Shown: piece after piece, positions 860 to 64,000 of the stretch
Position numbering within the stretch: the first letter of the stretch is position 1
Layout of the letters: each line of letters starts with the position of its first letter
Origin: Saccostrea cucullata
Taxonomy: Eukaryota
Direction: 5' to 3'
NCBI RefSeq assembly: GCF_032062105.1
Contig: NW_026930701.1
Span: 186,001-250,000 of the forward strand
Length of the DNA: 64,000 nucleotides
Notes under the pieces: generated by a model
Seen by the model: the letters and a program-made list of their open reading frames with translations, nothing else
Database searches by the model: none
Told to the model about the DNA's origin: nothing
Translations under genes and position numbers: made by a program

Positions 860-1141
860 CTCTTCGTTTCCGGTTTCTTCATTTTTTATAAGTTTCTTCA
901 CAGTGGGAGGGTTACCCTCTTTGACCTTATTAGTGACGTGCATGATGTCGTCATCAGTCAGTCCGTATTTCTCTATGACCTTCATCAACTCGTCCGTGTA
1001 AAGAATCTGTACGTCAGCATGATCCCTTGGTACCTCAGATGGGACCGGCGGATCTACTGAGGTGGAGTTATCGTCTAGTTCTTGAGATAAAACAACTCCA
1101 CAAAAACACAGCGATACAAGCAACGTCAAAATACGGGCCAT
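860..1141 (-). CDS. G1: secreted protein of the uncharacterised tandem family, first coding exon only (3' exons probably lie beyond the left edge)
   Basis: Acceptor ttttttcag|gATG at 1142 and donor GAG|gtaaag at 860/859. Signal peptide MARILTLLVSLCFCGVVLS-Q. Core domain QILYTDELMKVIEKYGLTDDDIMHVTNKVKEGNPPTVKKLIKNEETGNEE ends at the phase-0 intron shared by all paralogues. A possible non-coding exon donor (ag|gtaagt) lies at 2034. Confidence 0.85.
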
Positions 1142-4100
1142 CCTGAAAAAAAAAGAGTAGACGTACCTATCTTTTAAAAAAAATGTTGAGATCGTTTGAT
1201 ATTTTCTTGAGGCGTCTTATTATAAAGTTTTTGGTTATTGAGAGAATTGAATTGATAAAAAAATCATAATGGGTATTACACATACCAAATGCGGAACCAG
1301 CACCGCCGTCTTTTAAAGTTTTTTATTCTTATTTTTTTTTTATTTTGTTTGTATAACAAGCATTTACCTTCAGTTTAATTAATTTTGGTACATAAATTGA
1401 AGGAATGATAACATATCCAAGTTCTGTATTTATTTTATTATATTTTTTGCACTAGCTTTTGAAACAGACATGTGTTCGGTACGAAATATTCCTAAATATC
1501 ATTTTTCGACCATGTGTATTCTGACATAAGGTCACGTCTAGTTTCCAAAGATCAAGGGAAAAATCCACTTTTTATTTGTAGGAATTCGTCAGTTTCCACG
1601 GGCTTCCCGAACCCCACAGAACTTTTCCGTCGCCCTTCAATGCAGCCCCAGTCCTTTTTCTACCCCCCCCCCCCCGTTATGAATATTCTTGTTCCGCCAC
1701 TGCGTTAATTAATTTAGAAGTGGGTGGGAGTGTGATCGATGAAATCTGAGACTGAGGAGAATGGGATGCGGTCAGAAAATTAACTCTGGAAAACCTTACT
1801 TGGAAATTAATAAATAAGTATACGAAAATCACATCGCAAAATCCTGCAATGACTTTGCATCAAGAACGTAAATAATGTTTTCCCTTATTTTATAAATCAA
1901 TCGTAATTGCTTTCAGCTTATTGATTCTCCTTCAAAATTCAACAATTTTTATTTTTCTATTACTCAAAATATTGATAAGATAATTTCACGAAGAAATACA
2001 GAAAGAAAACTAAATAATGAAAGTTTCACTTACCTATCTGGTTTTTCTTGTATGTAGATACCTCTAGTACGATCCAATATATCCTAACATAGATAATCAA
2101 TTAAACTAATCAACTGTAATTAATTTAGTTTCCGTAGCTTGCATCATCTACAGAGTAATCAGCTGAACTTTAAACTATGGGTGTGTGGATTTTTCCTTTT
2201 TTTTCCCTTAAATTCAAATTCTTTTGAATCATTTGGTGATTTGGTTTATACCGTGTTTTATTTTTTCGTATAATTTATTCAAATGTATTTTACGAAGTAC
2301 ATGTATACCTAAATCTTCATTTTTATATTCAATTGGAATATAATGGTTAAAGAATTAAATACAATACTTAGCTAGAAAGTGTGACAAAGACGAAAAATTC
2401 CAGCTGTATTATCACATACATAAGGGAAAACCCTAGATGCACATCAATCATTTTTTTTTCTTCAAATTTTCAAGGTTAGGAATTTCATTAAAAATATTTT
2501 TAATTCTTCGCAAATGTTCGTCACATACATATGCATAGTCAAGGTAGGTCAACATAGAAAGTATTCCATCAACAAAGGGGCGATCAAATTAATAAGATTT
2601 GAAGTGATGTATAACTATGTACATGCTGGATTTTCCCGTTAAACCTGCATATCTATTTCGTAAAAAGAAAAAGTACATTAGAACTTTAGACCTTTAAAAT
2701 GTCATTTTTACTGCGCAATAGAAATTTAAATTCATCACAATATTTGAAATTCAAATTTCTGTCTTTAATTAAATGTAAAAAATTAAATAGATTTCATTTC
2801 ATGTTCCTTAAAAACAATACGGGTTTTATAACCTTTTTTTAAAAAAATTCTTCTTTCTCTTATTTTTTTTTTTAATTTGAAGTTTTATGAAAAAATAATT
2901 TTATCAAAGGAAAACGTGTATATTTAAAGTTTTATAATTGATTATTATAGATTCATTTGCTGATCCATAAGGAACAAGAAAACCCCCTCGCTTCATGAGT
3001 ATTTGTTTTTCCTTTTTTTTTTTTTTTGACTTGACTTGTTTTAAAACATATAGATGTACCAAAAAAGAATAATGATTAAATATTGATTTTAATAAAGACC
3101 CTCTAAGCAATTAATTTTTTTTTCTCACATTTTTTTTTTACTGTCATTCGTTAAAAAATTATCAAATTTAACATTCAAGCTTCAAAACAATCGACACAAA
3201 CTAGGACGACTTATTTCAACAAGAAAGGGAATTATAACAGCTGTTCGATTTTTTTTTAATTGTGACGGATGGGGGCGGTTACACAATAGAGCCCGAATTG
3301 AATCACGGGACGATTGATATATGATTGTTTATGTCGAAGTGTACCTTTCCTTTCCGACAGGTATTTCCTCTCGAATTATCTCTAAATTTTTCTCACTTTT
3401 TTGTGGTGAATAATGGGATAGTCGATCTTCTTGATCGATCGTTGAACAAGTGATTTGGTAAAATACGTTTTGTCATCGATCTAACCAATAAAATTAATCG
3501 ACACCAAATTTTGTGAAAAATACAAAGAAAATTTGGTTTATTTTGACAAGAGTTCCTTCATCTACAAACATTTTCAATGGTTTGGCCAATAACAAATCAT
3601 TTGAAGCTTAAATGTCTTTTCGATTAATCCTTATAAGCAGAAACATTTTTATGAAAATAAGTAGATAAAATTTACTAAATAAAACAATATTAAAATTTCT
3701 GGTCAATTATTAGGTAAAGAAAAAAGATAGAAAATGAAAGAAAATTAAAATGTAATTTAAATGAAGATAAACACAAGATTTTATCTGTTTATACCAAACC
3801 GTAACGGTTATACAATTTATTCGAAAAGAAATATTATTTTATGTAGACTTGTCCTGCATATTCAACGTTGCATTGAAAATAAACTGGTCATCATTGTCAT
3901 GCAAACTTTAGTCCTTTGTTGAATGGATTGGTTAGTACCGACCTTTTGTTACTCACACTTAGTACATGTACATATATCCTGTACAGTCTTCAGGTACAGT
4001 TAAGATGGATTAAGGGGAAAAAAACTGCGTTATTTAAAAGATGTTATAAAATATGTGTATGCCAATTGCAAATGACACAAAAAAAACTTTAAAAAAAAAA

Positions 4101-61804: not shown

Positions 61805-61870
<66 letters not shown>

Positions 61871-64000
61871 ATGTCTCTCTCTCTCGCAGTCTCCCTCTCT
61901 TTCTCTCTTTTCTTTTTAAAACAAATTACCATTTCTGTAAGCACTGTCTAGAGCTAGTAATTGAGCATCGAGATCCATGATCTTCTGCTTCAGAAATGAT
62001 TCCGCGTCCATTAGCTGCTCCAGCCTCGGTTCTGCTGGGCTGGTGACGTCAGGACCATCTCCTGGTTTTAATAATGGTTCTGGTTGTCCCCCGGGGAGTG
62101 GACCGGCGTCAGGGGTTATTATAGGAACCTGCGTGCCTCCAGGTCGATTTGTAAACTGCTCAAAGTCTAAAGTGACTACCTGTCGGAGAAATATAAATTA
62201 TGATTAAAGTAATAATTGATAAGTTAAACTGCTTGTTTGCTTAATATGTAATAATGATAACACTCATGTGTGCATTCACTTATTTGAACGTTTTATTATT
62301 GTTTGGATCTTTAAATCTTAGGGTTAATTTCTTATCTTTAGCCTCAACCTAGATAATTCCTGGATTATTTTTGAGTAATATGAAAATATACTTTTAGCAG
62401 TTGGGAAATATGTTTTTGAACGTTTTAAAAAGAGGTAAAACTATACTCTACGATAAGATTAATAATATAAAATACTCTTTTACATTTCTTTTTATGCATA
62501 TTTTCAGCTCGTGTAACATCCGTTGATCAATGTTTAAAAACTAATGTTTTACGTTTGTCGCAATATATTTAATGTACACACCAGAAAATATATTACTACA
62601 TGTACTTTGAAATGATTGTAATTAATAGTAAGCAAATCATAAAAATCCTAAATTAAATTCTGTCTTCTTAACTTGTTAAGCGTAAATAAGTTTATTTTAT
62701 ACCTAATGTGTATCACTCAATTTTACTGCTGATTTTACGCAATCACGTGACGTTGTGATCCGCGCCTGTCAACTCCACGTGATACGACCCTTCGGATCAA
62801 GTTACTGTTATAATAACATATATTTACCTCCTGAGCCCCTGTGTCGGGATTCCTCCGGGTCTTGGTAATGGTTGCACTCCCCCCTCTTGCGTACATCTCC
62901 AGCATCTTCCTGATCTCCTCCACTGTGATGTCATACGTCCTCATCATGTTCCTCAGCTCGTCATTATAAACCACCTGTCAAAATATAATAAGTTTATCAG
63001 AGGTGAATGTGTTCTCTTTGAAATAGTTCACACTTATTATACCTGTCCGCTTATCACAACGGTTGGAATTTCATTTTCATTTTGAAAAAGAGGATTTGAT
63101 TAAAATGATATTTTTCCAATATTGAATTTTTTGCAATTATTGTTTTTAGCAGCCTATGTATTCTTACATGTATATTACCTGCTTTTATAAGTATACAATC
63201 TTACCTAAATGTATACTGTTGTTATTGGTCTGTCTGTTGGTAGTACATTTTTACCTTAATGTTTCCTGCTGATATCGGTGTTCCTGATGGTAGTACATTT
63301 TTACCTTAATGTTTCCTGCTGATATCGGTGTTCCTGATGGTAGTACATTTTTACCTTAATGTTTCCTGCTGATATCGGTGTGTCTGTTGGTAGTAAATTT
63401 TTACCTATAATGTTTCGGTGTGTCTGTTGCTGATACCTGTAAGTTTCCTGCAGTTATCGGTGTGTCTGTTTGTAGTAAATTTTTACCTGTAAGTTTCCTG
63501 CTGATATCGGTGTGTCTGTTGGTAGTAAATTTTTACCTGTAAGTTTCCTGCTGATATCGGTGTGTCTGTTGGTAGTACATTTTTACCTGTAAGTTTCTTG
63601 CTGATATCGGTGTGTCTGTTGATAGTAAATTTTTACCTATATGTTTCCTGCTGTTATCGGTGTGTCTGTTGGTAGTACATTTTTACCTATATGTTTCCTT
63701 CTGTTATCGGTGTGTCTGTTGGTAGTACATTTTTACCTGTAAGTTTCCTGCAGTTATCGGTGTGTCTGTTGGTAGTACATTTTTACCTGTAAGTTTCCTG
63801 CTGTTATCGGTGTGTCTGTTGGTAGTACATTTTTACCTGTAAGTTACCTGCGGTTATCGGTGTGTCTGTTGGTAGTACATTTTTTTTACCTGTATGTTTC
63901 CTGCTGTTATCGGTGTGTCTGTTGGTAGTACATTTGAGCCTCTTTGCTCTCTACGTTGATTAATCAGTTGTTGCTCTATCAGACGCTGTTGATCTCTTCG
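60845..64000 (-). CDS. G8: family member, 5'-partial, join(>64000..63890, 62974..62828, 62179..61930, 61578..60845)
   Basis: First visible exon ...RGSNVLPTDTPITAGNIQ|gtaaaa. Core VVYNDELRNMMRTYDITVEEIRKMLEMYARGGSATITKTRRNPDTGAQE. Next exon VVTLDFEQF...LDSAYRN G|gt (phase 1). The last exon has PPYGLLREELLRIRAREMDILRRLRLLSSRY and an Arg-rich tail. AATAAA (minus strand) at 60744-60749. Confidence 0.9.
61808..61885. repeat. Compound (CT)n(CTGT)n microsatellite in a G8 intron
   Basis: Read directly from the sequence. Confidence 0.95.
63229..63934 (-). repeat. 50-bp minisatellite (~14 units) made of the G8 exon end and splice donor
   Basis: Plus-strand unit ggtagtacatttttacctgtaagtttcctgctgatatcggtgtgtctgtt reads on the minus strand as the NVLPTDTPISAGNLQ|gtaaa junction. 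Confidence 0.95.

What the first reader, a model, noticed from the sequence alone, without database searches (positions are those of the whole stretch)
860..64000. Tandem cluster of at least 8 secreted proteins sharing an unrecognised ~55-aa domain
Seen: eight co-oriented genes that share a core ending in a phase-0 intron after (Q/E/N)E; where the next exon is visible it starts x(I/V)(T/S)(L/I)D(F/L). The core is (Y/F)xI(T/S/A)xx(D/E)xxxMLxx(Y/F)xxG(G/E)x(A/P)xIx(K/R)(T/S)xx(N/D)xxxGx(Q/E)E, most divergent in G1. Flanking regions vary widely, giving proteins of ~190 to ~1075 aa. I cannot assign the core to a known domain. The cluster runs off both edges. Inference: a lineage-specific extracellular protein family. 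Low-complexity, Cys-free, charge-segregated secreted proteins in a bivalve suggest shell matrix, adhesive/cement or gamete-coat material.
Basis: partly seen in the sequence, partly recalled or inferred. Interest (0 to 1): 0.9.

Follow-up and report, generated by a model that had tools for sequence, protein, structure and literature searches.

The report
Oyster-only secreted scaffold protein family
A rock oyster has eight neighbouring gene copies for secreted proteins that share a small, strongly conserved domain with no known match and were found only in true oysters; they most likely build an extracellular material, but which one is not yet shown.

Summary
The genome is Saccostrea cucullata. 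Eight minus-strand loci share the core (leave-one-out 27-93 bits, shuffled windows at most 13). An RNA contig confirms the core-to-TLDF splice.

Corrections: the domain is about 62 aa and spans up to three exons. The family also shares a helical hairpin, an Arg-rich helix and a hydrophobic C-terminus. The cluster stops at eight. G2 has a broken exon, G6 is frameshifted and G7 is truncated.

Best reading: self-assembling, charge-segregated extracellular scaffold proteins (about 50%); tissue unknown. No paper searched names them, and the scan had no note on this family on other DNA.

The parts
860..1141 (-). G1 exon 1: signal peptide, short acidic linker, core (860-1012). Exon 2 (end of domain, shortened hairpin, Arg-rich helix, acidic tail) lies about 150-1030 bp left of the window. 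390 aa, RefSeq LOC134229693
6059..6517 (-). G2 exon 3: end of hairpin, coiled coil, C-terminal Arg-rich helix
7039..7243 (-). G2 exon 2, broken in this assembly: starts TITLDF, about 100 nt deleted against S. echinata, in-frame stop after 20 codons, donor region altered. RefSeq models a 261-aa product without most of the hairpin (S. echinata: 342 aa)
11083..11346 (-). G2 exon 1: signal peptide and core (11083-11238); LOC134229691
11424..11841 (-). 43-bp minisatellite whose unit is the G2 splice acceptor, ATG and first signal-peptide codons; also present in S. echinata
17091..19406 (-). G3 exon 2 (772 aa): end of domain, hairpin, long acidic Pro-rich region with helical repeats, Arg-rich tail
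21193..22101 (-). G3 exon 1 (303 aa): signal peptide, Pro/Asp-rich 11/22-aa repeats, core (21193-21345); whole protein 1075 aa
28595..29092 (-). G4 exon 3: end of domain, no hairpin, Arg-rich helix and tail
29374..29520 (-). G4 core exon (147 nt, phase 0-0)
29937..30131 (-). G4 exon 1: signal peptide, acidic linker, first strand of the domain; 280 aa, LOC134229686
35515..36173 (-). G5 exon 4: second hairpin helix, coiled coil, Arg-rich helix and tail
36500..36734 (-). G5 exon 3: end of domain, linker, first hairpin helix
37512..37658 (-). G5 core exon (147 nt, phase 0-0)
38679..38840 (-). G5 exon 1: signal peptide; about 400 aa in all. RefSeq LOC134229704 fuses G6 to G5 in one 618-aa model with an internal second signal peptide
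42612..42806 (-). G6 exon 3, with deletions against G7 that destroy the hairpin helix; probable decaying duplicate
44274..44417 (-). G6 core exon (144 nt), 96% identical in protein to G7
45401..45727 (-). G6 exon 1: signal-peptide-like start, Gln-rich linker
51497..51748 (-). G7 exon 3: end of domain and first hairpin helix, then a stop where G5 and G8 have a donor; no Arg-rich tail
54705..54848 (-). G7 core exon (144 nt)
55621..55803 (-). G7 exon 1: signal peptide; 193 aa, LOC134229695
60848..61578 (-). G8 exon 4: second hairpin helix, coiled coil, Arg-rich helix and tail
61930..62179 (-). G8 exon 3: end of domain, linker, first hairpin helix; covered by a spliced RNA contig
62828..62974 (-). 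G8 core exon (147 nt, phase 0-0); junction to exon 3 confirmed in RNA
63194..63935 (-). 50-bp minisatellite whose unit is the end of G8 exon 1 plus its GT donor
63890..64000 (-). End of G8 exon 1 (starts 474 bp right of the window: signal peptide, Gln-rich region); 571 aa in all

Best explanation
This is an undescribed family of secreted structural proteins of true oysters (Ostreidae), kept as a tandem cluster that had already split into G1-, G2-, G3- and G4-8-type genes before Saccostrea and Crassostrea/Magallana parted. Shown: signal-peptide-like starts, splicing, oyster-only named hits, purifying selection, and a predicted compact strand-helix-helix-strand-strand domain of about 62 aa followed by a disordered linker and an antiparallel helical hairpin. 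Most members then have an Arg-rich helix, a basic tail and two hydrophobic last residues. Inferred: the proteins are building blocks that assemble after secretion. The domain and hairpin are fixed protein-protein contact points, and the net-acidic N-terminal halves pair with the Arg-rich C-terminal ends of other molecules. This gives a condensed gel or fibrous matrix without disulfide or DOPA cross-links, with paralogues differing mainly in spacer length and charge. Weakly inferred: the product is an unmineralised epithelial secretion, most likely from the mantle (periostracum, ligament or cement binder; about 30% overall), rather than protein occluded in the calcite layers.
For: No catalytic or metal-binding residues are conserved in the core; the conserved columns are hydrophobic core, Gly and Thr/Lys/Asn/Glu, with no Cys or His. 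Core model pLDDT 89, pTM 0.71. Hairpin helices pLDDT 82-91, linker under 50. dN/dS against S. echinata: cores 0.08, hairpin segments 0.05-0.11, G5 Arg-rich helix 0.05, spacers 0.2-0.5. Net charge is negative in the N-terminal half and +12 to +18 in the last 90 residues of G4, G5, G8 and the M. gigas and O. edulis members; Arg is strongly preferred to Lys. 56-70% of residues are P/E/D/S/Q/R/N/T/G. C-termini end in two hydrophobic residues in G1-, G2-, G3-, G4-, G5- and G8-type proteins. Four subfamilies have members beyond Saccostrea. Gene order G5-G4 and G3-G2 is conserved in S. echinata, and a tandem array exists in M. gigas. Transcribed and spliced.
Against: No tissue, stage or proteome evidence was obtained; run metadata are coded. 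Known member IDs are absent from the C. nippona shell proteome table and from every paper searched. Charge segregation is weak in G2 and reversed at the tail in G1. Oligomerisation was not modelled. Signal peptides were judged by eye, not by a predictor.
Confidence: 0.5

Rival explanations
1. Classical shell matrix proteins occluded in the calcite layers (prismatic, foliated, chalky), with acidic regions binding calcium or mineral and basic regions binding the framework.
For: Secreted, low-complexity, lineage-specific and clustered, like many entries of the C. nippona shell table. G1 and G3 are acidic (pI 4.5-4.8).
Against: LOC105346499, LOC105346500, LOC105348507, LOC117683813 and LOC111111524 are not among the annotations of that three-layer proteome, although these Arg-rich proteins should give tryptic peptides. 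No Asp-rich or Gly/Tyr-rich blocks, and no chitin-binding or VWA domain. Caveat: the M. gigas IDs of G1- and G3-type genes are unknown, and the stored table was cut.
Confidence: 0.2
2. Secretory-granule or mucus components of gill, palp or gut (granin-like condensing cargo, mucus or crystalline-style scaffold), not linked to the shell.
For: Acidic, Pro-rich, helical, Cys-free secreted proteins with basic clusters fit granule cargo (own knowledge). G8 words occur in runs of seven studies, which suggests a commonly sampled tissue.
Against: No mucin-type Ser/Thr repeats or VWD/CK domains. Tissue labels are not visible, and only 4 of the 16 runs are on record as RNA.
Confidence: 0.15
3. Precursors of cationic defence or signalling peptides: the acidic N-terminal part masks an Arg-rich C-terminal peptide that convertases release.
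For: Acidic-then-basic layout; the Arg-rich helix is conserved (dN/dS 0.05 in G5); some members have furin-type sites.
Against: R-x-(K/R)-R sites are absent from G3, G4, G5, G7 and G8. A conserved folded domain and hairpin are not needed in a pro-region. There is no diversifying selection and no repeated peptide cassette.
Confidence: 0.08
4. Larval foot cement proteins used at settlement.
For: Named hits are all cementing oysters. The larval adhesive is proteinaceous and fibrous (PMC6193008, PMC6337334).
Against: Tyr is 1-2.5% and there is no collagen or VWF domain. Member IDs are not in the text of either larval-adhesive paper, but those use CGI numbers that I could not map, so this test is inconclusive.
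Confidence: 0.07
5. Gamete-coat or sperm-egg recognition proteins.
For: Secreted, lineage-restricted and duplicated.
Against: Core 90% identical between congeners at dS 0.68, dN/dS 0.08; no region above 0.51 between species. No ZP, F-lectin or lysin domain.
Confidence: 0.05

Closest known systems
Lineage-specific low-complexity molluscan matrix proteins (entries such as Shelk1, gigasin-4 and mantle protein in the C. nippona shell table, PMC10543319)
   Same: Signal peptide, biased composition, tandem clusters, narrow taxonomic range, no annotated domain
   Different: No sequence match shown. This family has a conserved folded domain, a helical hairpin and an Arg-rich helix, lacks Gly/Tyr or Asp blocks, and its known IDs are not in that proteome
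Calmodulin EF-hand pair
   Same: Profile positions 12-45 align weakly with calmodulin residues 28-63 (helix, linker, helix, start of loop 2); best whole-sequence E 0.0054
   Different: The best hits have Ala in place of loop Asp; other calmodulin entries score E 0.05-0.4 and no single stretch passes. Loop positions 1, 3, 5 and 6 are A/K/V, G, S/A/P and P/A. No EF-hand appears in the fold searches
LysM domain
   Same: Strand-helix-helix-strand order and a similar two-helix pattern; LysM repeat proteins appear among the weak HMMER hits
   Different: Profile match covers only 26 columns; the GDSL and NNL motifs are absent; there is an extra long beta-hairpin; no Pfam LysM hit and no LysM structure in the fold searches
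Generic antiparallel helical hairpins (ESCRT-III core, SMC arm, prefoldin, designed hairpins)
   Different: Hundreds of unrelated hairpins score alike, so this is a common arrangement and shows no kinship

Membership tests
Any Pfam or NCBIfam family | Score above the curated cut-off | tested here: not met
   best E about 6e-4 (DUF7864, below cut-off where shown), no family matched by most members
EF-hand (calmodulin-like) | 12-residue loop with D/N/E ligands at positions 1, 3, 5, 12 and Gly at 6 | tested here: not met
EF-hand (calmodulin-like) | Paired helix-loop-helix fold | tested here: not met
EF-hand (calmodulin-like) | Remote descent by profile-profile comparison with an EF-hand alignment | not tested
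LysM | Full-length match to the 44-aa motif, including GD(S/T)L and N-x-L | tested here: not met
LysM | Binding to GlcNAc polymers | not testable with these tools
   needs a binding assay
KH domain | GxxG loop between the two helices | tested here: not met
   The linker is (Y/F)-x-I-(T/S); no KH structure
Gigasins | Sequence match to gigasin-1 to -6 | tested here: inconclusive
   No member is named gigasin by NCBI or UniRef. Gigasin-2, -3a, -4 and -6 map to other genes in PMC10543319 Table S10. The gigasin sequences were not at hand for direct alignment
Shell matrix proteins (operational definition) | Detected in shell organic matrix and expressed in mantle | tested here: inconclusive
   Known IDs absent from one proteome table; IDs of G1- and G3-type orthologues unknown; no tissue data
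DOPA-type adhesive proteins | High Tyr and Lys content | tested here: not met
   Tyr 1.1-2.5%, Lys/Arg ratio 0.08-0.56
Gamete-recognition proteins (bindin, lysin, ZP type) | Rapid, positively selected divergence, or a lectin, ZP or lysin domain | tested here: not met

The most novel reading that the evidence does not exclude
The core is a fold not yet in the structure databases that arose in the true-oyster lineage, possibly from a calcium-blind EF-hand pair. The family is the self-assembling binder of an oyster-only material such as cement or the chalky-layer matrix, polymerising head to tail as each chain's hydrophobic C-terminal strand docks on the next chain's beta-hairpin.
Probability: 0.12. 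Interest if true: 0.8.

Novelty: new variant of a known kind. Interest (0 to 1): 0.5.

Why it matters
The proteins of oyster cement and of other oyster-only materials are poorly known, and the larval adhesive resists extraction (PMC6337334). A conserved, oyster-restricted secreted family with a small foldable domain and named orthologues in M. gigas, C. virginica and O. edulis is a ready target list. One expression look-up and one proteome re-search would place it. The 62-aa domain has no good structural match and is small enough to solve. If the family is only another mantle or mucus family, it is still a new domain family for annotation, and the RefSeq models of G2 and G6/G5 need correction.

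Tried and rejected
No family match in Pfam or NCBIfam or by PDB sequence. No fold match in PDB by Foldseek or VIA-align, in the Atlas, or in viral structures; Atlas feature searches were blank. LysM, KH and EF-hand were considered and failed their defining features; a remote EF-hand origin is not excluded. The neighbouring 847-aa and 179-aa secreted-looking ORFs are not members by profile (probability under 2%). The tyrosinase LOC105346503, whose number is next to two members and which is in the C. nippona prismatic layer, is a different gene; no tyrosinase domain lies on this contig. The alignment-based word search was swamped by low-complexity words. The search for related loci could not seed on the alignments, so metagenome, prokaryote and viral contig scans were not run. 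Paper searches by gene, protein and run ID were blank.
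Full report
Observation. The cores align at 29-69% identity to G8. Leave-one-out profile scores are 27 bits for G1 and 57-93 bits for the rest, against 3-13 bits in 20 shuffled windows. In G4-G8 the core is a separate 144-147 nt exon with phase-0 introns on both sides; in G1-G3 it ends exon 1. Two M. gigas members carry two cores in tandem, as such a symmetric exon allows (inference).

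Identity and extent. RefSeq proteins on a 430,534-bp contig match the window genes and are named Saccostrea cucullata LOC134229686, 691, 693, 695 and 704, all uncharacterized. A search of the whole genome finds these eight cores and only four more: a G3-like and a G2-like copy on contig C16601, a near-identical G3-like copy on C19369 (probably the same locus assembled twice), and a G2-like piece with a stop on C6162. So the cluster does not run on. Only G1's last exon and G8's first exon lie outside the window.

Three copies are damaged or cut short. G2 exon 2 has lost about 100 nt and its frame compared with S. echinata. G6 and G7 are two halves of a segmental duplication of about 9 kb, with dN/dS 0.5-0.8 between them on few changes. 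G7 stops after the first hairpin helix, and G6 exon 3 has further deletions. RefSeq joins G6 to G5 in one model with an internal signal peptide, probably an annotation error.

Expression. Sixteen runs from seven studies hold part of G8 exon 4 at a small share of words, so they come from a relative; four are on record as RNA. In RNA run X4 one 1846-nt contig covers the core exon and exon 3 and skips exactly the 648-nt GT..AG intron. Its loose ends match exon 1 and exon 4. Its listed differences are 5 synonymous and 0 replacement changes in the core, and 10 and 3 in exon 3. Intron-free full-length G1- and G2-type open frames occur in contigs of runs SRR32622307, -09, -10 and -11. Tissue labels were not available.

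Distribution. A profile of the eight cores against 1.84 billion representatives gave 21 hits at E below 4e-12, plus three fragments. Those with names are S. cucullata, S. echinata and Crassostrea (Magallana) angulata. Targeted searches added M. gigas (LOC105346499, LOC105346500, LOC105348507, LOC117683813, K1PUP6), C. virginica LOC111111524 and Ostrea edulis LOC130051085. The remaining weak hits are unrelated repeat proteins that match only a two-helix pattern. A core tree gives supported G1, G2/G3 and G3 groups and an unresolved G4-8 group, and the unnamed hits fall within these. Absence outside Ostreidae rests on this one 49-position profile; the closest outgroup families may be thinly sampled.

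Anatomy. The conserved unit is about 62 aa. Its first strand begins in the last codons before the core exon, and its last strand is the xITLDF start of the next exon. AlphaFold2 gives pLDDT 89 and pTM 0.71, with strand 8-10, helices 14-22 and 27-38, and a long hairpin of strands 44-50 and 57-63. After a disordered linker comes an antiparallel helical hairpin with a Gly turn; it is missing in G4, shortened in G1 and halved in G7. Most members then have an Arg-rich helix, G4/G5/G8-type proteins share a (L/T)SG(S/I)VTG-like tail motif, and most end in two hydrophobic residues. Mature chains have no Cys, little Tyr or His, and prefer Arg to Lys. Against S. echinata, dN/dS is 0.08 over 201 core codons, 0.05-0.11 in hairpin segments and 0.28 over all 1646 non-core codons.

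Function. Nothing found names these genes. Their known IDs are absent from the C. nippona prismatic, foliated and chalky proteome table of PMC10543319, where four gigasins map to other genes; the IDs of G1- and G3-type orthologues are unknown, so this test is incomplete. Purifying selection disfavours gamete recognition, low Tyr disfavours DOPA glue, and the lack of conserved convertase sites disfavours peptide precursors. What remains is a non-enzymatic secreted protein with conserved contact modules, free-length spacers and opposite charges at its two ends. I read it as a self-assembling extracellular scaffold (about 50%). The assembly mechanism and the site, most likely an unmineralised mantle secretion (about 30%), are inference.

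Limits and steps left out.

Verdict. This is a real, expressed, conserved and undescribed oyster family with a domain that has no match. Lineage-specific secreted clusters are common in molluscs, and the scan has noted other such clusters in this genome, so the kind is known; the domain and architecture are new. Interest 0.5.

Noticed in passing
window 63194-63935: A 50-bp minisatellite repeats the end of G8 exon 1 with its GT donor. There are 17 AG|GTA sites between 63179 and 63890, about one in three in frame with the first. The RNA contig joins an exon-end sequence in frame; which copy it uses cannot be told.
   Followed up: partly
window 11424-11841: A 43-bp minisatellite repeats the G2 acceptor, ATG and first signal codons. 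Only the copy nearest the gene opens the G2 frame. The array is also in S. echinata (L034 9458-10030) and beside the paralogues in L018 and L012, so it predates the species split.
   Followed up: partly
L016:1630-4170 (contig 261630-264170, minus): An 847-aa single-ORF protein with a signal-peptide-like start, acidic Pro-rich N-terminal half, short coiled coils and Arg-rich end, 11 kb upstream of G8 and co-oriented. No core and no Pfam match; it may be part of the same secreted material.
   Followed up: partly
L013:7401-7937 (contig 183401-183937, minus): A 179-aa ORF with a signal-peptide-like start just downstream of G1; 17 residues resemble the start of the domain, but not significantly.
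   Followed up: partly
window 39527-47772 and 49603-59075: Tandem segmental duplication at about 74-91% identity in blocks, carrying G6 and G7 and a 27-bp minisatellite. No G6/G7 match lies in the 10 kb upstream of G5 in S. echinata.
   Followed up: partly
window 35515-45727: RefSeq LOC134229704 (618 aa) fuses G6 and G5 and contains an internal signal peptide; likely a mis-joined model.
   Followed up: partly
L051 and L050 (contig 93198-104656, minus): Exons that look like a multicopper oxidase (HPIHLHG motif) about 80 kb beyond G1; not scanned against Pfam.
   Followed up: no
L013:1677-4424 (contig 177677-180424, minus): A 916-aa ORF that looks like a LINE endonuclease and reverse transcriptase, just beyond the cluster's left end.
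   Followed up: no
P0114 and P0064 (M. gigas LOC105348507, LOC117683813): Members with two tandem copies of the core, consistent with duplication of the phase 0-0 exon.
   Followed up: partly
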